From Octopus sinensis (taxonomy: Eukaryota), in contig NC_043006.1 of assembly GCF_006345805.1 (NCBI RefSeq), forward strand, positions 186,001 to 250,000: a stretch of 64,000 bases of DNA. Reading direction: 5' to 3'. The translations under genes and the position numbers were made by a program. Shown here in pieces: positions 26,963-64,000 of this stretch. How positions within the stretch are numbered: position 1 is the stretch's first letter; every line of letters starts with the position of its first letter. Below the pieces are notes generated by a model. That model made no database searches, was not told the origin of the DNA, and saw only the letters and a list, made by a program, of their open reading frames with translations.

Positions 26963-26972
26963 CAATAAGAGC

Positions 26973-26974
<2 letters not shown>

Positions 26975-27016
<42 letters not shown>

Positions 27017-29054: not shown

Positions 29055-29353
29055 CTAGGAAACAATAAAATAACATCACAAAATAATTTTGGTTATGCTT
29101 AACACAATTGCATTTTAACATAATAATATTCATATATAGCATCACAACCCATGCCAGCATGGAAAGCAGATGTTAAACGACGATGATGATGATGAGCACA
29201 ACAACATTCCATTGTGATGCCATACACACAAACACAGTATCTTAGCATTTCACTATGACACCACACACACACACATACACACATACACACACACAAACTT
29301 TTTTTTTTTAATTTTCAGAAACTTTTTACAAATTCATGTTTTACACAAGGGAA

Positions 29354-29760
29354 TACTCTTACTCTTTACTTGTTTCAGTCATTTGACTGTGGCCATGCTG
29401 GAGCACCACCTTCAGTTGAGCAAGTCGACCCCAGGATTTATTCTTTGTAAGCCTAGTACATATTCTATCGGTCTCTTTTGCCGAACCACTAAGTTACGGG
29501 GACATACACACACTAGCATCAGTTGTCAAGTGATGTTGGGGGGACAAACACAGACACACTAACATATACATACACACACATACATACATATATATATACA
29601 TATAGGACGGGCTTCTTTCAGTTTCCGTCTACCAAATCCACTCACAAGGCTTTGGTCGGCCTGAGGCTATAGTAGAAGACACTTGCCCAAAGTGCCATGC
29701 AGTGGGACTGAACCCAGAACCATGTGGTTGATAAGTAAGCTACTTACCACACAGCCACTC
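29354..29760 (-). mobile_element. SINE family A
   Basis: Colinear with the other copies. Confidence 0.9.
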
Positions 29761-30088
29761 CAATGCCTACTATGGAAAAATGTTTTTGAAATTTTCTTTT
29801 AAAAAATCAGTTTAAAATACGGAGTCTGAATTTTTGGTTTAAATTCCAACAATAGACCATTATATGTGTTCAAGAGCAGAAAGATATTCAAAAACCACCA
29901 ATAATTGAGTGACAAACAAACAAGGATGGTATGAGGTGGTTGTGAGATGTGCTAAAAATCACCCTTCTTTCCATAATTGTATTAATTCCCATGTGTAGAA
30001 CACAAATTCACAAAACTTAACTGAAAATTCAAAAAAATTAAAAAAAGCTATGAGGCAGGTTACATGGAGCGAATAAAGCAGAATTTCA

Positions 30089-42000: not shown

Positions 42001-45000
42001 GGTACCATATACACAAACATTTTGTCCATACAGTACCTCAACATTGTACTATGGTACCATATACACAAACATTTTGTCCACACAGTACCTTAACATTGTA
42101 CGATAGTACCATATACACAAACATTTTGTCTATACGGGACCTCAACATTGTACCATGGTACCATATACACAAATATTTTGTCAACACAGTACCTTAACAT
42201 TGTACTTTGGTACCATGTACACAAACATTTTCTCCATACGGTACCTTAACATTGTACTATGGTACCATATACACAAAGATTTTGCCCACACAGTACCTTA
42301 ACATTGTTCTATGGTACCATATACACAAACATTTTGTCCATACGGTACCTTAACATTGTACTATGGTACCATATACACAAACATTTTGTCCATACAGTAC
42401 CTTAACATTGTACTATAGTACCATATACGCAAACATTTTGTCCATACAGTACCTTAACATTGTACCATAGTAGCATATACACAAACATTTTGCCCTAACA
42501 GTACCTTCACATTGTACCATAGTAACATATACACAAACATTTTGTCCAAACAGTACCTTAACATTGTACCATGGTATCATATACACAAACATTTTATCCA
42601 TATGGTACCTTAACATTGTACTATGGTACCATATACACAAACATTTTGTCCATACGGTACCGTACAATATACACAAACATTTTGTCCATACGGTACCTTA
42701 ACATGATACCATTTACACAAACATTTTCTCCATACGGAACCTTAACATTGTACTATGGTACCATATACACAAACATTTTGTCCATACAGTACCTTAACAT
42801 TGTACCATAGTACCATATACACATACAATTTGCCCACACAGTACCTTAACATTGTACTATGGTACCATATACACATACATTTTGTCCATACGGTACCTTA
42901 ACATTGTACTATGGTACCATATACAAAAACATTTTGCCCACACAGTACCTTAACATTATACCATAGTACCATATACACGAACATTTTGCCCACACAGTAC
43001 CTTAACATTGTACCATAGTACCATATACACAAACATTTTGTCCATACGGTACCTTAACATTGTAGTATGGTACCATATACACAAACATTTTGTCCATACG
43101 GTACCTTAACATTGTACTATGGTACCATATACACAAACATTTTGTCCATACAGTACCTTAACATTGTACCATAGTACCATATACACAAACATTTTGTCCA
43201 TACAGTACCTTAACATTGTACCATAGTACCATATGCACAAACATTTAATCCATACAGTACCTTAACATTGTAACATAGTACCATATACGCAAACATTTTT
43301 GTCCGTACAAGACCTTAACATTAGACCATGGTACCATATACACAAACATTTTGTCCATATAGTACCTTACCATAGTACAATATACAAAAACATTTTGTCC
43401 ACACAGTACCTTAACATTGTACTATGGTGCCATATACAAAAACATTTTGTTCATACAGTACCTTAACGTTGTACTATGGTAACATATACACAAACATTTT
43501 GTCCATACAGGACCTTTACATTACAAACATTACATAGTACCATATACACATACATTTTGTCCACACAGTACCCTAACATTGTACCATGGTACCATATACA
43601 CAAACATTTTGTCCATACAGTACCTTAACATTGTACTATGGTACCATATACACAAACATTTTGTCCGCACAGTACCTCAACATTGTACTATGGTACCATA
43701 TACACAAACATTTTGTCCACACAGTACCTTAACATTGTACGATAGTACCATATACACAAAAATTTTGTCTATACGGGACGTCAACATTGTACCATGGTAC
43801 CATATACACAAAAATTTTGTCAACACAGTACCTTAACATTGTACTTTGGTACCATGTACACAAACATTTTGTCCATACGGTACCTTAACATTGTACTATG
43901 GTACCATATACACAAAGATTTTGCCCACACAGTACCTTAACATTGTTCTATGGTACCATATACACAAACATTTTGTCCATACGGTACCTTAACATTGTAC
44001 TATGGTACCATATACACAAATATTTTGTCCATACAGTACATTAACATTGTACTATGGTACCATATACACAAACATTTTGTCCATACAGTACCTTAACATT
44101 GTACTATAGTACCATATACACAAACATTTTGTCCATACAGTACCTTAACATTGTACCATAGTAGCATATACACAAACATTTTGCCCTGACAGTACCTTCA
44201 CATTGTACCATAGTAACATATACACAAACATTTTGTCCAAACAGTACCTTAACATTGTACCATGGTACCATATACACAAACATTTTATCCATATGGTACC
44301 TTAACATTGTACTATGGTACCATATACACAAACATTTTGTCCATACGGTACCGTACCATGGTACCATATACACAAACATTTTGTCCATACGGTACCTTAA
44401 CATGGTACCATTTACACAAACATTTTGTCCATACGGAACCTTAACATTGTACTATGGTACCATATACACAAACATTTTGTCCATACAGTACCTTAACATT
44501 GTACCATAGTACCATTTACACATACATTTTGCCCACACAGTACCTTAACATTGTACTATGGTACCATATACACATACATTTTGTCCATACGGTACCTTAA
44601 CATTGTACTATGGTACCATATACAAAAACATTTTGCCCACACAGTACCTTAACATTATACCATAGTACCATATACACGAACATTTTGCCCACACAGTACC
44701 TTAACATTGTACCATAGTACCATATACACAAACATTTTGTCCATACGGTACCTTAACATTGTAGTATGGTACCATATACACAAACATTTTGTCCATACGG
44801 TACATTAACATTGTACTATGGTACCATATACACAAACATTTTGTCCATACAGTACCTTAACATTGTACCATAGTACCATATACACAAACATTTTGTCCAT
44901 ACACTACCTTAACATTGTACCATAGTACCATATGCACAAACATTTAATCCATACAGTACCTTAACATTGTAACATAGTACCATATACACAAACATTTTGT

Positions 45001-48000
45001 CCATACAGTACCTTAACATTGTACCATGGTACCATATACACAAACATTTTGTCCATACAGTACCTTAACATTGTACTATGGTACCATATACACAAACATT
45101 TTGTCCATACAGTACCTTAACATTGTACTATGGTACCATATACACAAACATTTTGGCCATACAGTATCTTAACATTATACTATGGTACCATATACACAAA
45201 TATTTTGTCCATACAGTACCTTAACATTGTACTATGGTATCATATACACAAACATTTTGTCCATACAGTACCTTAACATTGTACTATGGTACCATATACA
45301 CAAACATTTTGTCCACACAGTACCTTAACATTGTACCATGGTACCATATACACAAACATTTTGTCCATACGGTACCTTAACATTGTACTATGGTACCATA
45401 TACAGAAATATTTTGTCCACACAGTACCTTAACATTATACTATGGTACCATATACACAAACATTTTGTCCATACGGTACCTTAACATTGTACTATGGTAC
45501 CATATACACAAATTTTGTCCATACCGTACCTTAACATTGTACTATGGTATCATATACACAAACATTTTGTCCATACGGTACCATATACACAAACATTCTG
45601 TCCATACAGTACCTGAACATAGTACCATATGCACAAACATCTTGTCCACACAGTACCTTAACATTATACTATGGTACCATATACACAAACATTTTATCCA
45701 TGCAGTACCTTAACATTGTACTATGGTACCATATACACAAACATTTTGTCCATACAGTACCTTAACATTGTACTATGGTACCATATACAAACATTTTGTA
45801 CATACGGTACCTTAACATTGTACTATGGTACCATATACACAAACATTTTGTCCCCACAGTACCTTAACATTGTACCATGGTACCATATACGCAAACATTT
45901 TGTCCATACGGTACCTTAACATTGTACCATAGTACCATATACACAAACATTTTGTCCATACAGTACCTTAACATTGAACCATGGTACCATATACACAAAT
46001 ATTTTGTCCATACAGTACCTTAACATTGTACTATGGTACCATATACACAAACATTTTGTCCATACAGGACCTTAACATTATAAACATTACATAGTACCAT
46101 ATACACATATATTTTGTCCACACAGTACCCTAACATTGTACCATGGTACCATATACACAAACATTTTGTCCATACAGTACCTTAACATTGTACCATGGTA
46201 CCATATACACAAACATTTTGTCCATACAGTACCTTAACATTGTACTATGGTACCATATACACAAACATTTTGTCCATACAGTACCTTAACATTGTATTAT
46301 GGTACCATATACACAAACATTTTGGCCATACGGTATCTTAACATTATACTATGGTACCATATACACAAATATTTTGTCCATACAGTACCTTAACATTGTA
46401 CTATGGTATCATATACACAAACATTTTGTCCATACAGTACCTTAACATTGTACTATGGTACCATATACACAAACATTTTGTCCACACAGTACCTTAACAT
46501 TGTACCATGGTACCATATACACAAACATTTTGTCCATACGGTACTTTAACATTGTACTATGGTACCATATACAGAAATATTTTGTCCACACAGTACCTTA
46601 ACATTATACTTTGGTACCATATACACAAACATTTTGTCCATACGGTACCTTAACATTGTACTATGGTACCATATACACAAACATTTTGTCCATACCGTAC
46701 CTTAACATTGTACTATGGTATCATATACACAAACATTTTGTCCATACGGTACCATATACACAAACATTCTGTCCATACAGTACCTGAACATAGTACCATA
46801 TGCACAAACATCTTGTCCACACAGTACCTTAACATTATACTATGGTACCATATACACAAACATTTTGTCCATGCAGTACCTTAACATTGTACTATGGTAC
46901 CATATACACAAACATTTTGTCCATACAGTACCTTAACATTGTACTATTGTACCATATACACACATTTTGTACATACGGTACCTTAACATTGTACCATGGT
47001 ACCATATACGCAAACATTTTGTCCATACGGTACCTTAACATTGTACCATAGTACCATATACACAAATATTTTGTCCATACTGTACCTTAACATTGAACCA
47101 TGGTACCATATACACAAATATTTTGTCCATACAGTACCTTAACATTGTACCATAGTACCATATGAACAAATATTTTGTCCACACAGTACCTTAACATTGT
47201 ACTATGGTACCATATACACAAACATTTTGTCCATACAGTACCTTCACATTGTACTTATGGTACCATATACACAAACATTTTGTCCATACAGTACCTCAAC
47301 ATTGTACTATGGTACCATATACACAAACATTTTGTCCACACAGTACCTTAACATTGTACGATAGTACCATATACACAAACATTTTGTCTATACGGGACCT
47401 CAACATTGTACCATGGTACCATATACACAATATTTGTCAACACAGTACCTTAACATTGTACTTTGGTACCATGTACACAAACATTTTCTCCATACGGTAC
47501 CTTAACATTGTACTATGGTACCATATACACAATTTTGCCCACAGTACCTTAACATTGTTCTATGGTACCATATACACAAACATTTTGTCCATACAGTACC
47601 TTAACATTGTACTATGGTACCATATACACAAACATTTTGTCCATACAGTACCTTAACATTGTACTATAGTACCATATACGCAAACATTTTGTCCATACAG
47701 TACCTTAACATTGTACCATAGTAGCATATACACAAACATTTTGCCCTAACAGTACCTTCACATTGTACCATTGTAACATATACACAAACATTTTGTCCAA
47801 ACAGTACCTTAACATTGTACCATGGTATCATATACACAAACATTTTATCCATATGGTACCTTAACATTGTACTATGGTACCATATACACAAACATTTTGT
47901 CCATACGGTACCGTACCATGGTACCATATACACAACATTTTGTCCATACGGTACCTTAACATGGTACCATTTACACAAACATTTTGTCCATACGGAACCT

Positions 48001-51000
48001 TAACATTGTACTATGGTACCATATACACAAACATTTTGTCCATACAGTACCTAAACATTGTACCATAGTACCATTTACACATACATTTTGCCCACACAGT
48101 ACCTTAACATTGTACTATGGTACCATATACACATACATTTTGTCCATACGGTACCTTAACATTGTACTATGGTACCATATACAAAAACATTTTGCCCACA
48201 CAGTACCTTAACATTATACCATAGTACCATATACACGAACATTTGCCCACACAGTACCTTAACATTGTACCATAGTACCATATACACAAACATTTTGTCC
48301 ATACGGTACCTTAACATTGTAGTATGGTACCATATACACAAACATTTTGTCCATACGGTACATTAACATTGTACTATGGTACCATATACACAAACATTTT
48401 GTCCATACAGTACCTTAACATTGTACCATAGTACCATATACACAAACATTTTGTCCATACACTACCTTAACATTGTACCATAGTACCATATGCACAAACA
48501 TTTAATCCATACAGTACCTTAACATTGTAACATAGTACCATATACACAAACATTTTGTCCATACAGTACCTTAACATTGTACCATGGTACCATATACACA
48601 AACATTTTGTCCATACAGTACCTTAACATTGTAGTATGGTACCATATACACAAACATTTTGGCCATACAGTATCTTAACATTATACTATGGTACCATATA
48701 CACAATATTTTGTCCATACAGTACCTTAACAAATGTACTATGGTACATATACACAAACATTTTGTCCATACAGTACCTTAACATTGTACTATGGTACCAT
48801 ATACACAAACATTTTGTCCACACAGTACCTTAACATTGTACCATGGTACCATATACACAAACATTTTGTCCATACGGTACCTTAACATTGTACTATGGTA
48901 CCATATACAGAAATATTTTCTCCACACAGTACCTTAACATTATACTTTGGTACCATATACACAAACATTTTGTCCATACGGTACCTTAACATTGTACTAT
49001 GGTACCATATACACAAATATTTTGTCCATACCGTACCTTAACATTGTACTATGGTATCATATACACAAACATTTTGTCCATACGGTACCATATACACAAA
49101 CATTCTGTCCATACAGTACCTGAACATAGTACCATATGCACAAACATCTTGTCCACACAGTACCTTAACATTATACTAGGTACCATATACACAACTTTTG
49201 TCCATGCAGTACCTTAACATTGTACTATGGTACCATATACACAAACATTTTGTCCATACAGTACCTTAACATTGTACTATGGTACCATATACAAACATTT
49301 TGTACATACGGTACCTTAACATTGTACTATGGTACCATATACACAAACATTTTGTCCCCACAGTACCTTAACATTGTACCATGGTACCATATACGCAAAC
49401 ATTTTGTCCATACGGTACCTTAACATTGTACCATAGTACCATATACACAAACATTTTGTCCATACAGTACCTTAACATTGAACCATGGTACCATATACAC
49501 AAATATTTTGTCCATACAGTACCCTAACATTGTACCATAGTACCATATGAACAAATATTTTGTCCACACAGTACCTTAACATTGTACCATGGTACCATAT
49601 ACACAAACATTTTGTCCATACAGTACCTTAACATTGTACTTATGGTACCATATACACAAACATTTTGTCCATACAGTACCTCAACATTGTACTATGGTAC
49701 CATATACACAAACATTTTGTCCACACAGTACCTTAACATTGTACGATAGTACCATATACACAAACATTTTGTCTATACGGGACGTCAACATTGTACCATG
49801 GTACCATATACACAAATATTTTGTCAACACAGTACCTTAACATTGTACTTTGGTACCATGTACACAAACATTTTGTCCATACGGTACCTTAACATTGTAC
49901 TATGGTACCATATACACAAACATTTTGTCCATACAGTACCTTAACATTGTACTATGGTACCATATACACAAACATTTTGTTCATACAGTACCTTAACATT
50001 GTACTATGGTACCATATACACAAACATTTTGTCCATACAGTACCTTGACATTATACTATGGTACCATATACACAAATATTTTGTCCATACAGTACCTTAA
50101 CATTGTACTATGGTACCATATACACAAACATTTTGTCCATACAGTACCTTAACATTGTACTATGGTACCATATACACAAAAATTTTGTCCATACGGTACC
50201 TTAACATTGTACTATGGTACCATATACACAAACATTTTGTCCATACAGTACCTTAACATTGTACTATGGTACCATATACACAAACATTTTGTCCACACAG
50301 TACCTTAACATTGTACTATGGTACCATATACACAAACATTTTGTCCATACGGTACCTTAACATTGTACTATGGTACCATATACACAAACATTTTGTCCAT
50401 ACAGTACCTTAACATTGTACTATGGTACCATATACACAAACATTTTTTCCATACGGTACCTTAACATTGTACTATCGTACCATATACAAACATTTTGTTC
50501 ATACGGTACCTCAACATTGTACTATGGTACCATATACACAAACATTTTGTCCATACAGTACCTTAACATTGTACCATGGTACCATATACACAAACATTTT
50601 GTCCATACAGTACCTTAACATTGTACTAAGGTAACATATACACAAACATTTTGTCCATACAGGACCTTAACATTGTACTATGGTACCATATACACAAACA
50701 TTTTGTCCATACAGTACCTTAACATTGTACTATGGTACCATATACACAAACATTTTGTCCATACAGGTACCTTAACATTATACCATGGTACCATATACAC
50801 AAACATTTTGTCCATACAGTACCTTAACTTTGTACTATGGTACCATATACACAAACATTTTGTCCATACGGTACCTTAACATTGTACTATGGTACCATAT
50901 ACACAAACATTTTGTCCATACAGTACCTTAACATGGTACCATATACATAACAAACATTTTGCCCACACAGTACCTTAACATTGTACTATGGTACCATACA

Positions 51001-54000
51001 CAAATATTTTGTCCATACAGTACCTTAACATTCTACTATGGTACCATATACACAAACATATTGTCCATACCGTACCTTAACATTGTACTATGGTACCATA
51101 TACACAAACATTTTGTCCATACAGTACCTTAACATTGTACTATGGTACCATATACACAAACATTTTGTCCATACAGTACCTTAACACATGGTACCATATA
51201 CACAAACATTTTGTCCATACAGTACCTTAACATTGTACTATGGTACCATATACACAAACATTTTGTCCATACAGTACCTTAACATTGTACTATGGTACCA
51301 TATACACAAACATTTTGTGCATACAGTACCTTAACATGGTACTATGGTACCATATACACAAACATTTTGTCCATACAGGACGTTAACATTACAAACATTA
51401 CATAGTACCATATACACATACATTTTGTCCACACAGTACCCTAACATTGTACCATGGTACCATATACACAAACATTTTGTCCATACAGTACCTTAACATT
51501 GTACTATGGTACCATATACACAACCATTTTGTCCATACAGTACCTTAACATTGTACTATGGTACCATATACACAAACATTTTGTCCATACAGTACCTTAA
51601 CATTGTACTATGGTACCATATACACAAACATTTTGTCCATACAGTACCTTAACATTATACTATGGTACCATATACACAAATATTTTGTCCATACAGTACC
51701 TTAACATTGTACTATGGTACCATATACACAAACATTTTGTCCATACAGTACCTTAACATTGTACTATGGTACCATATACACAAACATGTTGTCCATACGG
51801 TACCTTAACATTGTACTATGGTACCATATACACAAACATTTTGTCCATACAGTACCTCAACATTGTACTATGGTACCATATACACAAACATTTTGTCCAC
51901 ACAGTACCTTAACATTGTACTATGGTACCTTATACACAAACATTTTGTCCATACGGTACCTTAACATAGTACTATGGTACCATATGCACAAACATTTTGT
52001 CCATACAGTACCTTAACATTGTACTATGGTACCATATACCAAACATTTTCCATACGGTACCTTAACATTGTACTATCGTACCATATACAAACATTTTGTT
52101 CATACGGTACCTCAACATTGTACTATGGTACCATATACACAAACATTTTGTCCATAGAGTACCTTAACATTATGCCATGGTACCATATACACAAACATTT
52201 TGTCCATACAGTACTTTAACATTGTACGAAGGTAACATATACACAAACATTTTGTCCATACAGGACCTTAACATTGTACTATGGTACCATATACACAAAC
52301 ATTTTGTCCATACAGTACCTTAACATTGTACTATGGTACCATATACACAAACATTTTGTCCATACGGTACCTTAACATTATACCATGGTACCATATACAC
52401 AAACATTTTGTCCATACAGTACCTTAACATGGTACCATATACATAAACATTTTGCCCACACAGTACCTTAACATTGTACTATGGTACCATATACACAAAT
52501 ATTTTGTCCATACAGTACCTTAACATTCTACTATGGTACCATATACACAAACATATTGTCCATACCGTACCTTAACATTGTACTATGGTACCATATACAC
52601 AAACATTTTGTCCATACAGTACCTTAACATTGTACTATGGTACCATATACACAAACATTTTATCCATACAGTACCTTAACATGGTACCATATACACAAAC
52701 ATTTTGTCCATACAGTACCTTAACATTGTACTATGGTACCATATACACAAACATTTTGTCCATACAGTACCTTAACATTGTACTATGGTACCATATACAC
52801 AAACATTTTGTCCATACAGTACCTTAACATTGTACTATGGTACCATATACACAAACATTTTGTGCATACAGTACCTTAGCATGGTACTATGGTACCATAT
52901 ACACAAACATTTTGTCCATACAGGACGTTAACATTACAAACATTACATAGTACCATATACACATACATTTTGTCCACACAGTACCCTAACATTGTACCAT
53001 GGTACCATATACACAAACATTTTGTCCATACAGTACCTTAACATTGTACTATGGTACCATATACACAACCATTTTGTCCATACAGTACCTTAACATTGTA
53101 CTATGGTACCATATACACAAACATTTTGTCCATACAGTACCTTAACATTGTACTATGGTACCATATACACAAACATTTTGTCCATACAGTACCTTAACAT
53201 TATACTATGGTACCATATACACAAATATTTTGTCCATACAGTACCTTAACATTGTACTATGGTACCATATACACAAACATTTTGTCCATACAGTACCTTA
53301 ACATTGTACTATGGTACCATATACACAAACATGTTGTCCATACGGTACCTTAACATTGTACTATGGTACCATATACACAAACATTTTGTCCATACAGTAC
53401 CTCAACATTGTACTATGGTACCATATACACAAACATTTTGTCCACACAGTACCTTAACATTGTACTATGGTACCATATACACAAACATTTTGTCCATACG
53501 GTACCTTAACATAGTACTATGGTACCATATACACAAACATTTTGTCCATACAGTACCTTAACATTGTACTATGGTACCATATACCCAAACATTTTGTCCA
53601 TACGGTACCTTAACATTGTACTATCGTACCATATACAAACATTTTGTTCATACGGTACCTCAACATTGTACTATGGTACCATATACACAAACATTTTGTC
53701 CATAGAGTACCTTAACATTATGCCATGGTACCATATACACAAACATTTTGTCCATACAGTACTTTAACATTGTACGAAGGTAACATATACACAAACATTT
53801 TGTCCATACAGGACCTTAACATTGTACTATGGTACCATATACACAAACATTTTGTCCATACAGTACCTTAACATTGTACTATGGTACCATATACACAAAC
53901 ATTTTGTCCATACGGTACCTTAACATTATACCATGGTACCATATACACAAACATTTTGTCCATACAGTACCTTGACTTTGTACTATGGTACCATATACAC

Positions 54001-54885
54001 AAACATTTTGTCCATACGGTACCTTAACATTGTACTATGGTACCATATACACAAACATTTTGTCCATACAGTACCTTAACATGGTACCATATACATAAAC
54101 ATTTTGCCCACACAGTACCTTAACATTGTACTATGGTACCATATACACAAACATTTTGTCCATACAGTACCTTAACATTCTACTATGGTACCATATACAC
54201 AAACATATTGTCCATACAGTACCTTAACATTGTACTATGGTACCATATACACAAACATTTTGTCCATACAGTACCTTAACATTGTACTATGGTACCATAT
54301 ACACAAACATTTTATCCATACAGTACCTTAACATGGTACCATATACACAAACATTTTGTCCATACAGTACCTTAACATTGTACTATGGTACCATATACAC
54401 AAACATTTTGCCACACAGTACCTTAACATTGTACTATGGTACCATATACACAAACATTTTGTCCATACAGTACCTTAACATTGTACTATGGTACCATATA
54501 CACAAACATTTTGTCCATACAGTACCTTAACATTGTACTATGGTACCATATACACAAACATTTTGTGCATACAGTACCTTAGCATGGTACTATGTTACCA
54601 TATACACAAACATTTTGTCCATACAGTACCTTAACATTGTACTATGGTACCATATACACAAACATTTTGTCCATACAGTACCTTAACATTGTACCATAGT
54701 ACCATATACACAAACATTTTGTCCATACAGTACCTTAACATGGTACCATAGTACCATATACACAAACATTTTGTCCATACAGTACCTTAACATTGTAATA
54801 TGGTACCATATACACAAACATTTTGTTCTTAGAGTACCTTAACATTGTACCATGGTACCATATACACAAACACAGAGCCTTAACA
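30089..54885. repeat. ~24.8-kb tandem satellite, 52-bp monomer (roughly 480 units), intronic in LDHD
   Basis: Consensus ccatatacacaaacattttgtccatacagtaccttaacattgtactatggta, with recurrent 44-bp and 31-bp deletion monomers. Confidence 0.98.
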
Positions 54886-55826
54886 TTCCACTGTGGGAAA
54901 CTTAGCACAATTATGCAACCAAGTTTTCCTCAAATCACAAAAAAAAAGAAGAATAGATCAGAAAGTATGTACAAAATGTAGGAAAATTAGAGAAGATATC
55001 AGGAACATTAGGCTCCATAGTAGGAAGCTGGATTTTTATGTTAGATATGGGATGGAATTGAGAAGGCTAGCAGATAAGGGAGATGTTTAGAGTGGAGGAT
55101 AGCAGAGGTGGAGGAGAGCAATGGCTGAAGGCAGAGGCAGGAAGTTACGAGTTGAGAGGGTGGGTAAGGATAATGAGGAAAAGAAGCAGTTCTGAGAGTC
55201 GATCAGATGTAATCATCATCATCATCATCATCATATAACCTCCAGTTTTCATGCTGGCATGGGTTGAACAGTTCGACTGGGGTCTGGGAAGCCTGAAGGC
55301 TGCACCAGTCTTCAATTTTATTGAATAAATTTACTCTTTGATATTTTCAGATATTTTTATGTAATTTTGGTAAATATATCTGTTAAAATGAGATGTCAGG
55401 GTTATTTTCAATTCTTGTGTAATTTAGATTACAGTTTATTCACCACACCCTGTATATGTATATATATATATAGAATATATATATATATATATTCTCTCTA
55501 TATATATATTAATATATGATGATGATGATGATGATATAGTTAGCTTATTTAATATATATTAATAATATAGTTAGCTTATTTAATGAGTTTGTCTATATTT
55601 GAACCATTTCTTATTTTGATTATATTATTAATAGCTTGTACTAGCATTGTGTATATTAATAAATTTTAAAGTATTGTATAATTTAAGTATTGTTATTAGT
55701 TTTCACTTAATGTATATTTAGTATCTTTTATATATATATATATATTTTAAAGAATATACTTATATTTTAAAATACTTTTTTTGTATATATTTATTAATTA
55801 ATTTTTTTATTATTCTAGCTTATTTT

Positions 55827-55930
55827 TAACCTGATGAGTGGCTATATTTATATCGAAGTAATTTTACTACTACTATTAATTTTTTTACTATAATCATTTC
55901 TTAAATATAGCCACGAAACACGTGTTGTTA
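55827..55930 (+). ncRNA. Type I minimal hammerhead ribozyme (Penelope pLTR-type)
   Basis: Stem I TAAC/GTTA, core CTGATGA, perfect 13-bp stem II GTGGCTATATTTA/TAAATATAGCCAC, GAAA, palindromic stem III ACACGTGT, cleavage triplet GTT. Confidence 0.8.
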
Positions 55931-56361
55931 TTCTACCAATTATATACGTTTTTATTATTATTTTGCAATTTACTTAATCATCGGTATATTATTGTTATTT
56001 TATTTTTAATATTTCTATTATATGTAATTTTCTAGATGGTGTAATTTAATTGTTCATTTTGAATTGATTAAAGGTGTTTTCTTTCTAATTTTTATATATA
56101 TATATATATACATAGAGAGAGTGAGAGAGAGAGACACACACACACACTGTATATTTGTAAGTATGTCTAGCATTTCTTTACGCATTGCCTTCTACCAAAC
56201 TGAGTGTGTACCCTCATCCTGCACCTCTCTCTCTACCCCTCTCTCTATGTGATGTAAAGTGTGACTGGAAGAATAAACCAGCCAACATATTACATTGGCT
56301 ATAAAAAAAATGACTATACGGTAGTTCTTAGTGAATATCACTCAATGTATTGAATACTCAC

Positions 56362-56473
56362 TTATTTACTTTATTGGCAAGTTCGTTTACCATTCTGAAT
56401 TCGTTTTGATCATTGGGGTCAAAAGTAAGCGCAATATGGAAATTTCCATCACCAACATGACCAACAATAAAAC
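56362..56473 (-). CDS. LDHD: LDHD penultimate exon, alternative B (112 bp)
   Basis: Acceptor ccctttctAG and donor AA|GTGAGT, phase 1 to 2. Encodes (G)[36 protein letters not shown](K) and joins in frame to 29054. Confidence 0.9.
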
Positions 56474-56512
56474 CTAGAAAGGGAAAAAAATTAATGTACA
56501 AGTTGCACTCAC

Positions 56513-56624
56513 TTGCCCATTCGCTCAGCTAAATTATTAACCAATTTCTTCTCCTCGGCATCGTCTGGCATGACTGGGAAAAATACGTGGAAATTACCAT
56601 CTCCAACGTGACCGACAATTGGAC
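56513..56624 (-). CDS. LDHD: LDHD penultimate exon, alternative A (112 bp)
   Basis: Acceptor ttctttttccaAG and donor AA|GTGAGT, phase 1 to 2. Encodes (G)[36 protein letters not shown](K). Confidence 0.92.
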
Positions 56625-57693
56625 CTTGGAAAAAGAAATTTAAGAATAAGTGACAGATCAAAGTGATTGATTAACTGATGGAATACATGCATACACACAC
56701 ACACACACACAGAAATAGATTCATGAAAAGAATTTAGTAAAAATAACTGTCATTATAAAGTTGGGGCATAGAACAGAAACTAATTAAAAAAATGTTTGAT
56801 GAAGAATTTTAATTGAGATCATTTTAAAAACCTTTTGTTATTATATTTCGTTTTTGGATTTGGTTTGCAAGATTCTTTATAGGAATAATGGACAGAGTCA
56901 AAACTATTGAAAAGGTTGCAAAGACACAACGAAAATTTTAGGACAATAAAAATAAGAAAAAAGTGGAAATTTTACCGGTGAGTTTGTTAAATTATAAGGC
57001 ACAAAAAGAAAATGACTCTCCCCAGACACAACAGAACTTTTGTTATTAGATATCGGTTGAAATTTGTTTCAATTAATTTTGAAAATAATTATTTTAAGCT
57101 GGTGTTTGGAACATAAATTAACCTGAAATCTTGATGGTAGATTTTGATTTGAATTAATTAAAAACAGGTAGTTTTTTTTTAAATCTTTTTTTAACATTAA
57201 TAAAACTTTTTTTTTACTAACAGATAATTACATATATAACACGTTTGTCTATGATACATATATATAACACAAAACCACATTAAACTACAAATACAAAACT
57301 GAAGAAAACACAAATATGAGTGAAGAAAGAAAGAAAAAGAGAAAAAACCTTAATTCAACACCAAGTGCCTCAACTGGTTGCACAGCACAAGGTTCGATGG
57401 AACCTACTTAAGCAAACCAACACACTCATAGCATTACCAGGTGCGATGGTGAAGCTAAGGCATTGGTATGGCCAAGCACTCTCATAGGCATTACCTGACA
57501 CCTCAGCCAGGTGAGCCACCAACAACGACCAGGTAGTTTGTATCATAGAACCAGGAGTAGTCTCAGGTGAGTTAGTGTCAGAAAAGGATTTTTTTTAAAT
57601 CACAAAATAAAATACAGTTCTATATTTAAGGGATGAGGAATTATGTACATTATTTACATTTGACGGACATTTGTCCTCATCTTGTTAGTTGTT

Positions 57694-57739
57694 AACACAA
57701 CGTTTCGGCTGATATACTCTCCAGCCTTCTTCAGGTGTC
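57694..57739 (-). ncRNA. Minimal hammerhead ribozyme, left arm (core intact)
   Basis: Minus strand reads GACAC-CTGAAGA-a-GGCTG(gagagtatat)CAGCC-GAAA-CGT-T-GTGTT, with palindromic stem III ACGT. Confidence 0.72.
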
Positions 57740-58001
57740 TTGGCTAAATTTTGAACCTGGGTTCTCAGTCCAAAGGTATTTTTCGATGATGATGATGTTC
57801 TTGTTGTTATTATTATTATTATCATAATTATTGTTATTGTTGTTGTTGTTATTGTTCAGGTCACTGCTTGGAATCAAACTCGGAATCTTGGGGTTAGTAG
57901 CCCGTGGGCATATGGCATAGTCGTTAAGAGCACAGGCTACTAATCCCAAGATTCCGAGTTCAATTCCAAGCAGTGACCTGAAAAATAACAACGACAACAA
58001 C

Positions 58002-58048
<47 letters not shown>

Positions 58049-58130
58049 TGATGATAATAATCGAAATAATAATAATAATAACATCGAAAAATACCTTAGG
58101 AACGAGAACCCAGGTTTGAAATTTCCCCAA

Positions 58131-58176
58131 GACACCTGAAGAAGGCTGGAGGATATATCAGCCGAAATGTTGTGTT
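58131..58176 (+). ncRNA. Minimal hammerhead ribozyme, right arm (ACGT>ATGT in stem III)
   Basis: GACAC-CTGAAGA-a-GGCTG..CAGCC-GAAA-TGT-T-GTGTT. Confidence 0.65.
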
Positions 58177-58357
58177 AACAACAAACAAGATGAGGACAAA
58201 TATTTGTTGAATGTAAATAATGTACAAAATAAGATATGAAATAATTCTAGTAATGAGAGTATAGTCATCCAATAACTCATCCAGGACACCATGGAAGATA
58301 TGACTGGGATAAAAAATAGAAAAAAATATGACACAATGGAATGGTTAATGCAAATAA

Positions 58358-58740
58358 GTGGAGGTGCAATGGCCCAGTGGTTAGGACAGCGGACTCGCGG
58401 TTGTAGGATCGCGGTTTCGATTCCCAGACCGGGCGTTGTGAGTGTTTATTGAGTGAAAACACATAAAGATCCACGAGGCTCCGGCAGGGATGGTGGTGAT
58501 CCCTGCTGTACTCTTTCACCACAACTTTCTCTCACTCTTACTTCCTGTTTCTGTTGTACCTGTATTTCAAAGGGCCGGCCTTGTCACTCTCTGTGTCATG
58601 CTGAATATCCCCGAGAACTACTGTAAGGGTACACGTGTCTGTGGAGTGCTCAGCCACTTACACGTTAATTTCACGAGCAGGCTGTTCCATTGATCGGATC
58701 AACCGGAACCCTCATTGTCGTAACCGATGGAGTGCTTCCT
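58358..58740 (+). mobile_element. tRNA-derived SINE, family C (full length)
   Basis: A-box TGGCCCAGTGG, B-box GGTTTCGATTCCC; body matches 3640-3973. Confidence 0.9.
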
Positions 58741-58936
58741 CTACTGCAAACCTATCAGATCAGAACTAAGAACTGTAAACTAATGATGGAGTCATTAATA
58801 GTGTTTTTACTGCTAACAGGAATGACATGAGCCAATGTATAGGAACCAGTTTATATTTGGGAGAACCAAGCCAGTGGACAGTTGTTGTTTTTTCATGGAC
58901 GTATGCAGTGCTGGTGATAGAATATAAACCAGCAAC

Positions 58937-59007
58937 CCTAACACCAACCACTCCAAGAGTGTAGTGGGTGCTTTTACATGCCACCAGCACGAGGGCATTG
59001 GCCACAC
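58937..59007 (-). mobile_element. RTE 3' UTR segment seeding the 66-bp satellite
   Basis: cctaacaccaaccactccaagagtgtagtgggtgcttttacatgccacc matches 25340-25390 and about 1753-1800. Confidence 0.85.
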
Positions 59008-62000
59008 TCAAATGATGCTTTTTACATGCCACCTGCACAGGGGCCAGTCCAGCGGCACTGGCAATGACCATGCTCGAATGGTGCTTTTTACATGCCACTG
59101 GCACAGGAGCCAGTCAGGCAGTATTGGCACTGATCACGCTTGAATGGTGCTTTTTACGTGCCACTGGCACAGGAGCCAGTCAGGCAGTATTGGCACTGAT
59201 CACGCTTGAATGGTGCTTTTTACGTGCCACTGGCACAGGAGCCAGTCAGGCAGTATTGGCACTGATCACGCTTGAATGGTGCTTTTTATGTGCCACTGGC
59301 CCAGGAGCCAGTCAGGCAGTATTGGCACTGATCACGCTTGAATGGTGCTTTTTATGTGCCACTGGCACAGGAGCCAGTCAGGCAGTATTGGCACTGATCA
59401 CGCTTGAATGGTGCTTTTTACGTGCCACTGGCACAGGAGCCAGTCAGGCAGTATTGGCACTGATCACGCTTGAATGGTGCTTTTTACGTGCCACTGGCAC
59501 AGGAGCCAGTCAGGCAGTATTGGCACTGATCACGCTTGAATGGTGCTTTTTATGTGCCACCTGCACAGGGGCCAGTCAGGCAGTATTGGCACTGATCACG
59601 CTTGAATGGTGCTTTTTACGTGCCACTGGCACAGGAGCCAGTCAGGCAGTATTGGCACTGATCACGCTTGAATGGTGCTTTTTACGTGCCACTGGCACAG
59701 GAGCCAGTCAGGCAGTATTGGCACTGATCACGCTTGAATGGTGCTTTTTATGTGCCACTGGCACAGGAGCCAGTCAGGCAGTATTGGCACTGATCACGCT
59801 TGAATGGTGCTTTTTATGTGCCACTGCACAGGGGCCAGTCAGGCAGTATTGGCACTGATCACGCTTGAATGGTGCTTTTACGTGCCACTGGCACAGGAGC
59901 CAGTCAGGCAGTATTGGCACTGATCACGCTTGAATGGTGCTTTTTACGTGCCACTGGCACAGGAGCCAGTCAGGCAGTATTGGCACTGATCACGCTTGAA
60001 TGGTGCTTTTTATGTGCCACCTGCACAGGGGCCAGTCAGGCAGTATTGGCACTGATCACGCTTGAATGGTGCTTTTTACGTGCCACTGGCACAGGAGCCA
60101 GTCAGGCAGTATTGGCACTGATCACGCTTGAATGGTGCTTTTTACGTGCCACTGGCACAGGAGCCAGTCAGGCAGTATTGGCACTGATCACGCTTGAATG
60201 GTGCTTTTTATGTGCCACTGGCACAGGAGCCAGTCAGGCAGTATTGGCACTGATCACGCTTGAATGGTGCTTTTTATGTGCCACCTGCACAGGGGCCAGT
60301 CAGGCAGTATTGGCACTGATCACGCTTGAATGGTGCTTTTTACGTGCCACTGGCACAGGAGCCAGTCAGGCAGTATTGGCACTGATCACGCTTGAATGGT
60401 GCTTTTTACGTGCCACTGGCACAGGAGCCAGTCAGGCAGTATTGGCACTGATCACGCTTGAATGGTGCTTTTTACGTGCCACTGGCACAGGAGCCAGTCA
60501 GGCAGTATTGGCACTGATCACGCTTGAATGGTGCTTTTTATGTGCCACTGGCACAGGAGCCAGTCAGGCAGTATTGGCACTGATCACGCTTGAATGGTGC
60601 TTTTTATGTGCCACCTGCACAGGGGCCAGTCAGGCAGTATTGGCACTGATCACGCTTGAATGGTGCTTTTACGTGCCACTGGCACAGGAGCCAGTCAGGC
60701 AGTATTGGCACTGATCACGCTTGAATGGTGCTTTTTACGTGCCACTGGCACAGGAGCCAGTCAGGCAGTATTGGCACTGATCACGCTTGAATGGTGCTTT
60801 TTACGTGCCACTGGCACAGGAGCCAGTCAGGCAGTATTGGCACTGATCACGCTTGAATGGTGCTTTTTATGTGCCACCTGCACAGGGGCCAGTCAGGCAG
60901 TATTGGCACTGATCACGCTTGAATGGTGCTTTTTACGTGCCACTGGCACAGGAGCCAGTCAGGCAGTATTGGCACTGATCACGCTTGAATGGTGCTTTTT
61001 ACGTGCCACTGGCACAGGAGCCAGTCAGGCAGTATTGGCACTGATCACGCTTGAATGGTGCTTTTTACGTGCCACTGGCACAGGAGCCAGTCAGGCAGTA
61101 TTGGCACTGATCACGCTTGAATGGTGCTTTTATGTGCCACTGGCACAGGAGCCAGTCAGGCAGTATTGGCACTGATCACGCTTGAATGGTGCTTTTTATG
61201 TGCCACCTGCACAGGGGCCAGTCAGGCAGTATTGGCACTGATCACGCTTGAATGGTGCTTTTTACGTGCCACTGGCACAGGAGCCAGTCAGGCAGTATTG
61301 GCACTGATCACGCTTGAATGGTGCTTTTTATGTGCCACTGGCACAGGAGCCAGTCAGGCAGTATTGGCACTGATCACGCTTGAATGGTGCTTTTTATGTG
61401 CCACTGGCACAGGAGCCAGTCAGGCAGTATTGGCACTGATCACGCTTGAATGGTGCTTTTTATGTGCCACCTGCACAGGGGCCAGTCAGGCAGTATTGGC
61501 ACTGATCACGCTTGAATGGTGCTTTTTACGTGCCACTGGCACAGGAGCCAGTCAGGCAGTATTGGCACTGATCACGCTTGAATGGTGCTTTTTATGTGCC
61601 ACCTGCACAGGGGCCAGTCAGGCAGTATTGGCACTGATCACGCTTGAATGGTGCTTTTTACGTGCCACTGGCACAGGAGCCAGTCAGGCAGTATTGGCAC
61701 TGATCACGCTTGAATGGTGCTTTTTATGTGCCACTGGCACAGGAGCCAGTCAGGCAGTATTGGCACTGATCACGCTTGAATGGTGCTTTTTATGTGCCAC
61801 CTGCACAGGGGCCAGTCAGGCAGTATTGGCACTGATCACGCTTGAATGGTGCTTTTTACGTGCCACTGGCACAGGAGCCAGTCAGGCAGTATTGGCACTG
61901 ATCACGCTTGAATGGTGCTTTTTATGTGCCACCTGGCACAGGGGCCAGTCAGGCAGTATTGGCACTGATCACGCTTGAATGGTGCTTTTTACGTGCCACT

Positions 62001-64000
62001 GGCACAGGAGCCAGTCAGGCAGTATTGGCACTGATCACGCTTGAATGGTGCTTTTTACGTGCCACTGGCACAGGAGCCAGTCAGGCAGTATTGGCACTGA
62101 TCACGCTTGAATGTTGCTTTTTATGTGCCACCTGCACAGGGCCAGTCAGGCAGTATTGGCACTGATCACGCTTGAATGGTGCTTTTTACGTGCCACTGGC
62201 ACAGGAGCCAGTCAGGCAGTATTGGCACTGATCACGCTTGAATGGTGCTTTTTACGTGCCACTGGCACAGGAGCCAGTCAGGCAGTATTGGCACTGATCA
62301 CGCTTGAATGGTGCTTTTTACGTGCCACTGGCACAGGAGCCAGTCAGGCAGTATTGGCACTGATCACGCTTGAATGGTGCTTTTTACGTGCCACTGGCAC
62401 AGGAGCCAGTCAGGCAGTATTGGCACTGATCACGCTTGAATGGTGCTTTTTATGTGCCACTGGCACAGGAGCCAGTCAGGCAGTATTGGCACTGATCACG
62501 CTTGAATGGTGCTTTTTATGTGCCACTGGCACAGGAGCCAGTCAGGCAGTATTGGCACTGATCACGCTTGAATGGTGCTTTTTATGTGCCACTGGCACAG
62601 GAGCCAGTCAGGCAGTATTGGCACTGATCACGCTTGAATGGTGCTTTTTATGTGCCACTGGCACAGGAGCCAGTCAGGCAGTATTGGCACTGATCACGCT
62701 TGAATGGTGCTTTTTACGTGCCACTGGCACAGGAGCCAGTCAGGCAGTATTGGCACTGATCACGCTTGAATGGTGCTTTTTATGTGCCACTGGCACAGGA
62801 GCCAGTCAGGCAGTATTGGCACTGATCACGCTTGAATGGTGCTTTTTACGTGCCACTGGCACAGGAGCCAGTCAGGCAGTATTGGCACTGATCACGCTTG
62901 AATGGTGCTTTTTATGTGCCACTGGCACAGGAGCCAGTCAGGCAGTATTGGCACTGATCACGCTTGAATGGTGCTTTTTACGTGCCACTGGCACAGGGGC
63001 CAGTCCAGCGGCACTGGCAATGACCATGCTTGAATGGTGCTTTTTATGTGCCACTGGCACAGGAGCCAGTCAGGCAGTATTGGCACTGATCACGCTTGAA
63101 TGGTGCTTTTTACGTGCCACTGGCACAGGAGCCAGTCAGGCAGTATTGGCACTGATCACGCTTGAATGGTGCTTTTTATGTGCCACTGGCACAGGAGCCA
63201 GTCAGGCAGTATTGGCACTGATCACGCTTGAATGGTGCTTTTTACGTGCCACTGGCACAGGAGCCAGTCAGGCAGTATTGGCACTGATCACGCTTGAATG
63301 GTGCTTTTTATGTGCCACTGGCACAGGAGCCAGTCAGGCAGGCAGTATTGGCACTGATCACGCTTGAATGGTGCTTTTTACGTGCCACTGGCACAGGAGC
63401 CAGTCAGGCAGTATTGGCACTGATCACGCTTGAATGGTGCTTTTTATGTGCCACTGGCACAGGAGCCAGTCAGGCAGTATTGGCACTGATCACGCTTGAA
63501 TGGTGCTTTTACGTGCCACTGGCACAGGAGCCAGTCAGGCAGTATTGGCACTGATCACGCTTGAATGGTGCTTTTTACGTGCCACTGGCACAGGAGCCAG
63601 TCAGGCAGTATTGGCACTGATCACGCTTGAATGGTGCTTTTTATGTGCCACTGGCACAGGAGCCAGTCAGGCAGTATTGGCACTGATCACGCTTGAATGG
63701 TGCTTTTTATGTGCCACTGGCACAGGAGCCAGTCAGGCAGTATTGGCACTGATCACGCTTGAATGGTGCTTTTTACGTGCCACTGGCACAGGAGCCAGTC
63801 AGGCAGTATTGGCACTGATCACGCTTGAATGGTGCTTTTTACGTGCCACTGGCACAGGAGCCAGTCAGGCAGTATTGGCACTGATCACGCTTGAATGGTG
63901 CTTTTTACGTGCCACTGGCACAGGAGCCAGTCCAGCGGGACTGGCAATGACCACGCTTGAATGGTGCTTTTTACGTGCCACTGGCACAGGAGCCAGTCAG
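59008..64000. repeat. >=5-kb tandem satellite, 66-bp monomer (about 75 units, runs off the window), intronic in LDHD
   Basis: Consensus cttgaatggtgctttttacgtgccactggcacaggagccagtcaggcagtattggcactgatcacg; highly homogeneous. Confidence 0.98.

What the first reader, a model, noticed from the sequence alone, without database searches (positions are those of the whole stretch)
56362..56624. Tandem duplicated active-site exons in LDHD separated by a 39-nt intron: sterically enforced mutually exclusive splicing
Seen: two 112-bp exons with identical phases (1 to 2) and canonical AG/GTGAGT sites, each splicing in frame to the last exon (29054). Both encode [11 protein letters not shown]. Across these 11 codons they differ at 5 synonymous and 0 non-synonymous sites, then diverge right after the second His ([24 protein letters not shown] vs IALTFDPNDQNEFRMVNELANKVN). 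The spacer is 39 nt with a branch-like CATTAAT only ~20 nt from the upstream donor. Including both exons shifts the frame (112 is not a multiple of 3), and read-through hits AAG-TGA. Established: in LDHD/D2HGDH the two His of GHxGDGNxH bind the catalytic metal, and a short donor-to-branch distance is the classic mechanism enforcing exclusivity (alpha-tropomyosin type). Inference: one gene makes two D-2-hydroxyacid dehydrogenases with different substrate-pocket linings, possibly tissue- or hypoxia-regulated. I know of no description of this in molluscs but could not search.
Basis: partly seen in the sequence, partly recalled or inferred. Interest (0 to 1): 0.85.

Follow-up and report, generated by a model that had tools for sequence, protein, structure and literature searches.

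The report
Alternative active-site exons in octopus LDHD
The octopus gene for mitochondrial D-lactate dehydrogenase carries two interchangeable copies of the exon that builds part of the catalytic site, set too close together to be spliced to each other; the pair is real, is already annotated as two isoforms, and is shared with oysters, mussels and limpets, so it is old but apparently undescribed in papers.

Summary
On the minus strand lie two homologous 112-nt exons: A at 56513-56624 and B at 56362-56473. They share the same phase and have AG/GTGAGT splice sites, and a 39-nt spacer separates them. Each joins in frame to the last exon at 29054.

The window is Octopus sinensis chromosome CM016868.1. 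RefSeq already lists both products: isoform X1 (XP_029641646.1) uses exon A and isoform X2 (XP_029641647.1) uses exon B.

The pair is not specific to octopus. The same A-then-B layout occurs in O. bimaculoides, Argonauta, oysters, mussels, clams, scallops and two gastropods. Spacers measure 20-46 nt in seven of eight genomes examined and 366 nt in Dreissena. Every other intron of these genes is at least about 190 nt.

A chiton, the snail Physella and an annelid have only an A-like copy. All B exons group together in a tree, which points to one ancient duplication.

The swapped segment keeps both metal-binding histidines. It changes the residue two positions after the second histidine, which corresponds to mouse Ile407, one of four residues lining the hydrophobic substrate pocket. 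That residue is Phe in A, and Leu (Ala in O. sinensis) in B.

Steric exclusion and different substrate preference are well-supported inferences, not shown here. I found no paper describing this. It is a new member of a known kind and of moderate interest.

The parts
56513..56624 (-). Exon A of LDHD, the upstream alternative. It is 112 nt, phase 1 to 2, and encodes (G)[36 protein letters not shown](K). RefSeq isoform X1 uses it.
   Evidence: The peptide is identical to residues of P0490 / XP_029641646.1. tblastn gives E about 1e-8 to 1e-9.
56474..56512 (-). The 39-nt spacer between the exon A donor and the exon B acceptor. It packs a GTGAGT donor, a branch-like CATTAAT, a pyrimidine tract and TAG into one short stretch.
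   Evidence: About 80% of its positions are invariant across O. sinensis, O. bimaculoides and Argonauta, which is as conserved as the coding sequence. Its length is 39/39/38 nt in the three octopods.
56490..56496 (-). Candidate branch site CATTAAT (UUAAU fits yUnAy). Its branch A is 21 nt from the exon A donor and 17-18 nt from the exon B acceptor.
   Evidence: Read directly from the sequence. The ATTAA core is kept in all three octopods. The branch point has not been mapped experimentally.
56362..56473 (-). Exon B of LDHD, the downstream alternative. It is 112 nt, phase 1 to 2, and encodes (G)[36 protein letters not shown](K). RefSeq isoform X2 uses it.
   Evidence: The peptide is identical to P0371 / XP_029641647.1. 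Orthologous B exons occur in 7 other mollusc loci.
28880..29054 (-). Coding part of the last exon, shared by both isoforms: [23 protein letters not shown]...SKVLFPS, with stop codon TAA at 28880-28882. It holds the Glu-His pair (TGEHG) that aligns to mouse Glu442/His443.
29055..56361 (-). Last intron, 27.3 kb. About 24.8 kb of it (30090-54872) is a tandem array of a 52-bp unit. The same intron is about 3.4 kb in O. bimaculoides and about 1.4 kb in Argonauta.
56625..64000 (-). 3' part of the intron upstream of exon A. The whole intron is about 14.6 kb, and the previous exon (..[31 protein letters not shown]) lies outside the window. It contains a 66-bp satellite from 59011 to the window end.
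   Evidence: L002 upstream exon at 39345-39437, exon A at 54036.

Best explanation
This is a genuine pair of mutually exclusive exons in the Octopus sinensis gene for mitochondrial FAD-dependent D-lactate (D-2-hydroxyacid) dehydrogenase, LDHD. It arose by one tandem duplication of the penultimate coding exon, early in mollusc evolution.

Each mRNA takes either exon A or exon B. Three things exclude other outcomes:

- The 39-nt spacer is shorter than any workable intron. The only branch-like site is about 21 nt from the exon A donor, so A cannot be spliced to B. Factors bound at the A donor probably occlude the B branch site and pyrimidine tract (inferred).
- Including both exons, or neither, shifts the frame because 112 is not a multiple of 3. 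This creates an early stop more than 50 nt before the last junction, so such mRNAs should be removed by nonsense-mediated decay (inferred).
- Retaining the spacer stops translation at once.

Both products keep the two Mn2+-binding histidines. They differ in the strand that follows the second histidine, including the position equal to mouse Ile407 in the hydrophobic substrate subsite. That residue is Phe in A. In B it is Leu in most species and Ala in O. sinensis.

The most likely consequence is two isozymes with different preference among D-2-hydroxyacids. A would be the main form and B a regulated minor form (inferred, not shown).
For: - Sequence anatomy and the four splice outcomes are.
- The window is 100% identical to O. 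sinensis CM016868.1.
- Both isoforms are RefSeq models: X1 uses A (P0490) and X2 uses B (P0371).
- Genomic loci show the same A-then-B layout with canonical sites. Spacers are 39 nt in O. sinensis, 39 in O. bimaculoides, 38 in Argonauta, 26 in Saccostrea, 20 in Mytilus, 44 in Gigantopelta, 46 in Patella and 366 in Dreissena.
- All A exons are 112 nt and the B exons are 112 or 115 nt.
- Every other intron in these genes is at least about 190 nt, and at least about 500 nt in octopods.
- A/B isoform pairs are annotated in Magallana, Crassostrea virginica, Ostrea, Saccostrea, Mercenaria, Mya, Argopecten, Mytilus species, Dreissena and Gigantopelta.
- In a neighbour-joining tree all B exons form one split and all mollusc A exons another, with bootstrap 0.49 and 0.47. 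Within-species A+B pairs appear in at most 3 of 500 replicates (Patella only, 0.006); 0 of 500 for the other species.
- Selection is purifying among octopods: dN/dS is 0.13-0.19 for A and 0.39-0.47 for B. Synonymous sites between A and B are saturated, with pS 0.57-0.92.
- The spacer is about 80% invariant across octopods, while the flanking introns are not conserved between Octopus and Argonauta.
- Mouse LDHD binds Mn2+ through His398, His405 and Glu442. Its subsite B consists of Val101, Trp351, Ser365 and Ile407 (PMC10589216). Both window forms align without gaps to the mouse chain.
- A human survey treats a donor-to-branch distance below 50 bp as steric interference. It found that 60% of such exon clusters have lengths not divisible by 3 (PMC5740500).
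Against: - No read-level evidence was obtainable here. Support for B use rests on annotation models whose RNA-seq backing I could not inspect.
- Every assembled transcript contig I could see was A-type. These came from the Logan cephalopod-like clusters P0372 and P0408, the oyster cluster P0384 and Mytilus P0520. B is therefore at best a minor or restricted form.
- Dreissena keeps the pair with a 366-nt spacer, so steric hindrance is not required for the system to persist.
- B evolves faster than A.
- O. sinensis B has Ala where other B exons have Leu.
- A chiton, Physella and probably other heterobranch snails do without B.
- Bootstrap support for a single origin is only moderate, because the alignment has 37 columns.
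- No enzyme data exist for either form.
Confidence: 0.78

Rival explanations
1. Exclusivity is enforced mainly by the reading frame and nonsense-mediated decay, perhaps with regulatory proteins. On this view the short spacer is only a leftover of how the duplication happened and has no mechanistic role.
For: The exons are 112 or 115 nt in every species, never a multiple of 3. Double inclusion gives an early stop. Dreissena keeps both annotated isoforms with a 366-nt spacer. In humans, 60% of such exon clusters rely on frame incompatibility and only 9% show potential steric interference (PMC5740500).
Against: Seven of eight genomes, spanning more than 500 million years, keep the spacer at 20-46 nt. 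All other introns of the same genes are 190 nt to 27 kb and vary freely; the neighbouring intron ranges from 1.4 to 27 kb among octopods. A neutral leftover would be expected to drift in length. The octopod spacer is as conserved as coding sequence. Spacers of 20 and 26 nt cannot physically be spliced out.
Confidence: 0.15
2. Exon B is a little-used or decaying duplicate with no distinct function. The X2-type isoforms would then be splicing noise or annotation by homology.
For: Every assembled transcript contig examined is A-type. B has a higher dN/dS than A. B is absent from the chiton, Physella and annelid loci. O. bimaculoides and Patella have B in the genome but no annotated B isoform.
Against: B keeps an open frame, both splice sites, compatible length and the complete GHVGDGN(F/I)H motif in all eight loci from three classes. 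Its dN/dS is below 0.5. B exons from different classes resemble each other more than their own A partner. An unused exon would not survive this long.
Confidence: 0.05
3. The two forms differ in something other than substrate preference. Candidates are metal affinity, catalytic rate, stability at different temperature or pH, or contact with the electron acceptor.
For: The swap also changes the residue before the first-His strand (Pro in A, Phe/Tyr/Leu/Gly in B). It also changes the Pro after the second-His strand and the whole following helix. Only one of the four pocket residues is in this exon. Mouse LDHD is a monomer, so an effect on oligomer contacts is unlikely.
Against: The most consistent A/B difference sits at and around the position equal to Ile407. 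The mouse structure paper names this residue in the hydrophobic subsite and contrasts it with Asn443 of D2HGDH as a basis of specificity.
Confidence: 0.25

Closest known systems
Alpha-tropomyosin (TPM1) exons 2/3, the classic steric-hindrance mutually exclusive pair
   Same: Two adjacent homologous exons. The donor of the first lies too close to the branch point of the second for a spliceosome to assemble between them. This point comes from my own knowledge; the criterion of less than 50 bp is cited in PMC5740500.
   Different: In tropomyosin the intron is longer and the branch point sits unusually far upstream of its acceptor. Here the entire spacer (20-46 nt) is below working intron size, so donor, branch site and acceptor signals are packed together or overlap.
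coq-2 exons 6a/6e (PMC7434440)
   Same: Same-length mutually exclusive exons that remodel the catalytic core of a mitochondrial metabolic enzyme and switch its substrate. The pair is present in molluscs and linked to life with little oxygen.
   Different: A different gene. The coq-2 pair is also found in annelids and helminths and has genetic proof of function. The LDHD pair was seen only in molluscs here (the annelid Ridgeia has one copy) and has no functional data.
OGDH exons 4a/4b (PMC7969005)
   Same: A mutually exclusive pair in a mitochondrial dehydrogenase. Exclusivity is tied to branch points near the upstream donor and to a restricted intron length (abstract).
   Different: A vertebrate gene and a regulatory (calcium-sensing) segment rather than substrate-pocket residues. 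I read only the abstract.
Vertebrate, echinoderm, hemichordate and nematode LDHD
   Same: Same enzyme and same exon content. The GHVGDGNFH motif is invariant, and the mouse structure is solved (8jdc and related entries).
   Different: All sequences seen from these groups carry a single version of this segment. Their genomes were not examined for silent copies.

Membership tests
Mutually exclusive exon pair from tandem exon duplication | Adjacent exons are homologous to each other | tested here: met
   A and B share 60 of 112 nt and 52.6% of amino acids. Both match the same LDHD segment of other animals at E about 1e-8 to 1e-9.
Mutually exclusive exon pair from tandem exon duplication | Same phase and compatible length, with canonical splice sites on both exons | tested here: met
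   Both exons are 112 nt and run from phase 1 to 2, with AG acceptors and GTGAGT donors.
Mutually exclusive exon pair from tandem exon duplication | Either exon alone gives the full reading frame; both together or neither break it | tested here: met
   In-silico splice products.
Mutually exclusive exon pair from tandem exon duplication | Independent gene models exist with exactly one of the two exons | tested here: met
   XP_029641646.1 uses A and XP_029641647.1 uses B in O. sinensis. Equivalent pairs are annotated in more than 10 other molluscs.
Mutually exclusive exon pair from tandem exon duplication | Junction reads for upstream-A, upstream-B, A-last and B-last, with A-B junctions absent or rare | not testable with these tools
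   No read data were available. All assembled transcript contigs seen are A-type.
Mutually exclusive exon pair from tandem exon duplication | Both exons are conserved in related species | tested here: met
   Eight genomic loci from cephalopods, bivalves and gastropods. dN/dS is below 0.5 for both exons.
Steric-hindrance type of mutual exclusion | The distance from the upstream donor to the downstream branch point is below the working minimum (under about 50 nt) | tested here: met
   The whole spacer is 39 nt here and 20-46 nt in six other species. The criterion comes from PMC5740500.
Steric-hindrance type of mutual exclusion | The branch point is mapped, and lengthening the spacer releases A-B splicing | not testable with these tools
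   This needs lariat mapping and minigene experiments.
LDHD (FAD-dependent D-2-hydroxyacid dehydrogenase, VAO/PCMH family) | FAD_binding_4 plus FAD-oxidase_C domain architecture | tested here: met
   P0371 matches PF01565 at 4.6e-36 and PF02913 at 5.9e-70.
LDHD (FAD-dependent D-2-hydroxyacid dehydrogenase, VAO/PCMH family) | Metal ligands equal to mouse His398, His405 and Glu442, and substrate-contacting His443 | tested here: met
   Both forms align without gaps to mouse LDHD chain 8jdc, at E 2e-30 and 6e-28. Both histidines are present in A and in B, and EH is present in the last exon.
LDHD (FAD-dependent D-2-hydroxyacid dehydrogenase, VAO/PCMH family) | Enzyme activity on D-lactate or other D-2-hydroxyacids | not testable with these tools
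   No biochemical data for any mollusc LDHD were found.

The most novel reading that the evidence does not exclude
Conchiferan molluscs have kept an isozyme switch inside one LDHD gene since about the Cambrian. Exon A places Phe in the substrate pocket and exon B places Leu or Ala, which would make the pocket larger. Under this reading the choice is regulated by tissue or oxygen supply and tunes mitochondrial oxidation of D-lactate against bulkier D-2-hydroxyacids. That would fit animals whose anaerobic glycolysis ends in D-lactate (PMC2570690). It would be a second case, beside coq-2, of an exon swap that rewires mollusc mitochondrial metabolism. With spacers of only 20-26 nt in mussels and oysters, the donor of one exon and the acceptor signals of the next would physically overlap.
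Probability: 0.3. Interest if true: 0.65.

Novelty: new member of a known kind. Interest (0 to 1): 0.45.

Why it matters
Mutually exclusive exons that survive hundreds of millions of years nearly always mark a functional choice. Here the choice sits in the catalytic pocket of an enzyme whose substrate range was defined only in 2023 and only in mouse.

Many molluscs make D-lactate as a main anaerobic end product, so two versions of the enzyme that oxidises it could matter for recovery from low oxygen.

The comparative series of spacers (20, 26, 38, 39, 39, 44, 46 and 366 nt) is a ready-made natural experiment. It can show how short a gap enforces exclusive splicing.

In practical terms, annotation of O. 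bimaculoides, O. vulgaris and Patella misses the B isoform.

Tried and rejected
1. Two protein searches with the 94-residue A-last and B-last peptides listed only proteins of at most 164 residues. They therefore hid all full-length cephalopod LDHDs. I solved this with a chimeric 340-residue profile made of a nematode N-terminal part plus the window's C-terminus in both forms.
2. The best hit of the representative-library search was P0197, with two matched stretches. It looked like a model containing both exons but is a bird-like chimeric model and is irrelevant.
3. I looked for B-type transcripts among Logan assemblies through cluster listings. All listed contigs are A-type. This neither proves nor excludes B expression, because only 15 members per cluster are shown.
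4. The Argopecten look-up returned a transcript contig rather than genomic DNA (L011), so no spacer length is available for scallops.
5. I searched the chiton, Physella and Ridgeia loci for a degenerate second copy with tblastn, a motif scan and a profile of B exons. None was found.
6. Separate paralogous genes are rejected. The exons lie 20-46 nt apart and share all flanking exons.
7. Recent duplication or gene conversion is rejected. Synonymous sites between A and B are saturated, and B exons group across species.
8. Literature searches for LDHD with mutually exclusive splicing, cephalopods, oysters and exon duplication found no description.
9. Structure prediction was not run. The tool returns no coordinates, so it could not add to the gapless alignment with the solved mouse structure.

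Full report
**What is in the window**

The gene lies on the minus strand.
- Exon A is 56513-56624 and exon B is 56362-56473. Each is 112 nt, and each starts with two bases that complete a codon and ends with two bases of the next.
- The acceptors are CCAAG|GT for A and TTTCTAG|GT for B. Both donors are GTGAGT.
- The exons are separated by 39 nt (56474-56512): GTGAGTGCAACTTGTACATTAATTTTTTTCCCTTTCTAG.
- The encoded peptides share [11 protein letters not shown]. In that stretch there are 5 synonymous and 0 non-synonymous differences. After it the peptides diverge: [24 protein letters not shown] in A and IALTFDPNDQNEFRMVNELANKVN in B.
- The last exon begins at 29054 and the stop codon is at 28880-28882.
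- I built the five possible products in silico. A-last and B-last are open to the natural stop. A+B stops after eight wrong residues. Spacer retention stops at once at AAG-TGA. Skipping both exons shifts the frame.
- tblastn with LDHD fragments from a snail, a fish and a bird finds these three exons and nothing else in the 64 kb. There are no further hidden copies, and the preceding exon lies outside the window.

**Where the window comes from and what is already annotated**

Short peptide queries returned only short database proteins. I therefore built a 340-residue profile from a nematode LDHD N-terminal part plus the window's C-terminus in both forms.
- The second-best hit, P0371, is Octopus sinensis LDHD isoform X2 (XP_029641647.1). 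Its C-terminus is identical to window exon B plus the last exon.
- Its cluster partner P0490 is isoform X1 (XP_029641646.1), which carries exon A.
- The genomic locus of this gene (L002, chromosome CM016868.1) is 100% identical to window 26880-64000.
- The gene spans about 80 kb. The intron before exon A is about 14.6 kb and the one after exon B is 27.3 kb.

The two isoforms are therefore existing RefSeq models. I could not see the read support behind them.

**The pair is old and widespread in molluscs**

Isoform pairs that differ in exactly this segment are annotated in many species. They include Saccostrea (two species), Magallana gigas and M. angulata, Crassostrea virginica, Ostrea edulis, Mytilus (five species), Dreissena, Mya, Mercenaria, Argopecten and the vent snail Gigantopelta.

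I fetched genomic DNA for eight species and located both exons and their splice sites.
- The order is always A then B.
- A is always 112 nt. B is 112 or 115 nt, never a multiple of three.
- Spacers are as follows:

| Species | Spacer (nt) |
|---|---|
| O. sinensis | 39 |
| O. bimaculoides | 39 |
| Argonauta hians | 38 |
| Saccostrea cucullata | 26 |
| Mytilus galloprovincialis | 20 |
| Gigantopelta aegis | 44 |
| Patella caerulea | 46 |
| Dreissena polymorpha | 366 |

- O. bimaculoides and Patella have an intact B exon that their annotations miss.
- As an internal control, I estimated all other intron lengths in the same genes. None is below about 190 nt, and none is below about 500 nt in octopods.
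- A chiton (Liolophura), the snail Physella and the annelid Ridgeia each have a single exon. It is A-like in the two molluscs. tblastn, a motif scan and a profile of B exons found no second copy.

**One duplication or many?**

I built a neighbour-joining tree of the 37-residue segment from 26 mollusc exons and 9 outgroups.
- All B exons fall on one side of a split and all mollusc A exons, including the single copies, fall on another.
- Bootstrap support is 0.49 and 0.47, which is moderate for so few columns.
- The A and B exons of one species paired in at most 3 of 500 replicates (Patella only, 0.006), and never for the other eleven species.
- In the variable 25 residues, B exons are 35% identical to each other, 28% identical to their own A partner and 23% identical to A exons of other species.
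- Synonymous sites between A and B are saturated, with pS 0.57-0.92.

The simplest reading is a single duplication before cephalopods, gastropods and bivalves separated, with later losses in some lineages. Whether it predates chitons is open.

**Selection**

Among the three octopods, dN/dS is 0.13-0.19 for A and 0.39-0.47 for B. Both exons are constrained, B less so.

The 39-nt spacer is about 80% invariant across the three octopods. The introns a few bases beyond the exons are not alignable between Octopus and Argonauta. That fits a stretch which must hold a donor, a branch site, a pyrimidine tract and an acceptor.

**How exclusivity most likely works**

These facts are shown:
- the spacer length;
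- the position of the only branch-like motif (CATTAAT, 56490-56496), 21 nt from the A donor;
- the frame consequences of each splice outcome.

The rest is inferred from established knowledge. A spliceosome cannot assemble across so short a donor-to-branch distance. A human survey uses less than 50 bp as the criterion (PMC5740500), and alpha-tropomyosin exons 2/3 are the classic case (my own knowledge).
- With 20 and 26 nt in mussel and oyster, the A donor and the B pyrimidine tract almost touch. Binding at one should exclude binding at the other.
- The branch used for B may lie in or before exon A in those species.
- The frame shift with an early stop more than 50 nt upstream of the last junction would send any A+B product to nonsense-mediated decay, which acts as a second safeguard.
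- Dreissena, with 366 nt, shows that this second safeguard (or other regulators) can carry the system alone.

**What the swap changes in the protein**

- Both window forms align without gaps to the solved mouse LDHD chain (8jdc and related entries) at E 2e-30 and 6e-28.
- In the mouse enzyme Mn2+ is held by His398, His405 and Glu442. The hydrophobic subsite that accommodates the variable part of the substrate consists of Val101, Trp351, Ser365 and Ile407 (PMC10589216).
- Counting from the alignment, the residue two after the second histidine is Ile407. It is Phe in every mollusc A exon (HVF), Leu in nearly all B exons (HxL) and Ala in O. sinensis B (HIA).
- The same paper contrasts this subsite with Asn443 of D2HGDH, which by my recollection of its metal ligands is the equivalent position.
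- B also replaces the Pro before the first-histidine strand and the Pro that follows FF in A.
- Mouse LDHD is a monomer, so an effect on subunit contacts is unlikely.

A bulkier Phe against Leu or Ala in a four-residue pocket makes a shift in preference among D-2-hydroxyacids the most likely effect. No enzyme data exist to confirm it.

**Which form is the main one?**

Every assembled transcript contig I could inspect is A-type. These include two cephalopod-like Logan clusters, many oyster contigs and a Mytilus contig. The listings are capped, so this indicates only that A dominates.

**Context**

Several molluscs, including an octopus, oysters, mussels, limpets and a chiton, were reported to have only D-specific lactate dehydrogenase activity (PMC2570690). 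Oxidation of D-lactate may therefore be a larger task in these animals than in mammals.

The closest published parallel is coq-2. There, same-length mutually exclusive exons remodel the enzyme core and switch quinone synthesis in helminths, annelids and molluscs (PMC7434440).

I found no paper on this LDHD pair.

**Verdict**

It is a new, well-conserved member of a known class.

Noticed in passing
window 30090-54872: A 24.8-kb tandem array of a 52-bp unit (about 480 copies, 82-91% matches) fills most of the last LDHD intron. The same intron is about 3.4 kb in O. bimaculoides and about 1.4 kb in Argonauta, so the array is a recent expansion.
   Followed up: partly
window 59011-64000: A 66-bp satellite with at least 75 copies and 96% matches runs to the window end, inside the intron upstream of exon A.
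   Followed up: no
window 15497-17273 (+): Overlapping open frames with reverse-transcriptase, RNase H and integrase matches. This is a retrotransposon pol remnant downstream of LDHD. Another retroelement-like frame with a weak PHD-finger match lies at 26022-27047 (-).
   Followed up: partly
window about 1146, 14219, 21253, 29627: A dispersed repeat whose translation reads ..QGIGRPGAIAEDTCPRCHAVGL.. occurs at least four times, on both strands. It is probably a short interspersed element.
   Followed up: no
L004 1-1700, L006 1-712, L008 1-656, L010 1-871, L011 116-532: A ribosomal protein L14e gene sits head-to-head immediately upstream of LDHD in oyster, chiton, limpet, mussel and scallop. This neighbourhood is conserved across mollusc classes. 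In Argopecten a single transcript contig carries both genes.
   Followed up: no
L012 22342-22453; L008 8692-8803: O. bimaculoides and Patella caerulea have an intact exon B with canonical splice sites, but their annotations list only the A form.
   Followed up: yes
L009 23597-23962: Dreissena polymorpha is the only species examined whose A-B spacer has grown, to 366 nt. Two near-identical X1 proteins are listed for this species, which suggests a recent gene or haplotype duplicate.
   Followed up: no
P0197 (representative library): A 275-residue bird-like LDHD model contains the C-terminal segment twice. It is probably a mis-assembled or mis-predicted gene and is not an exon pair like the one studied here.
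   Followed up: partly
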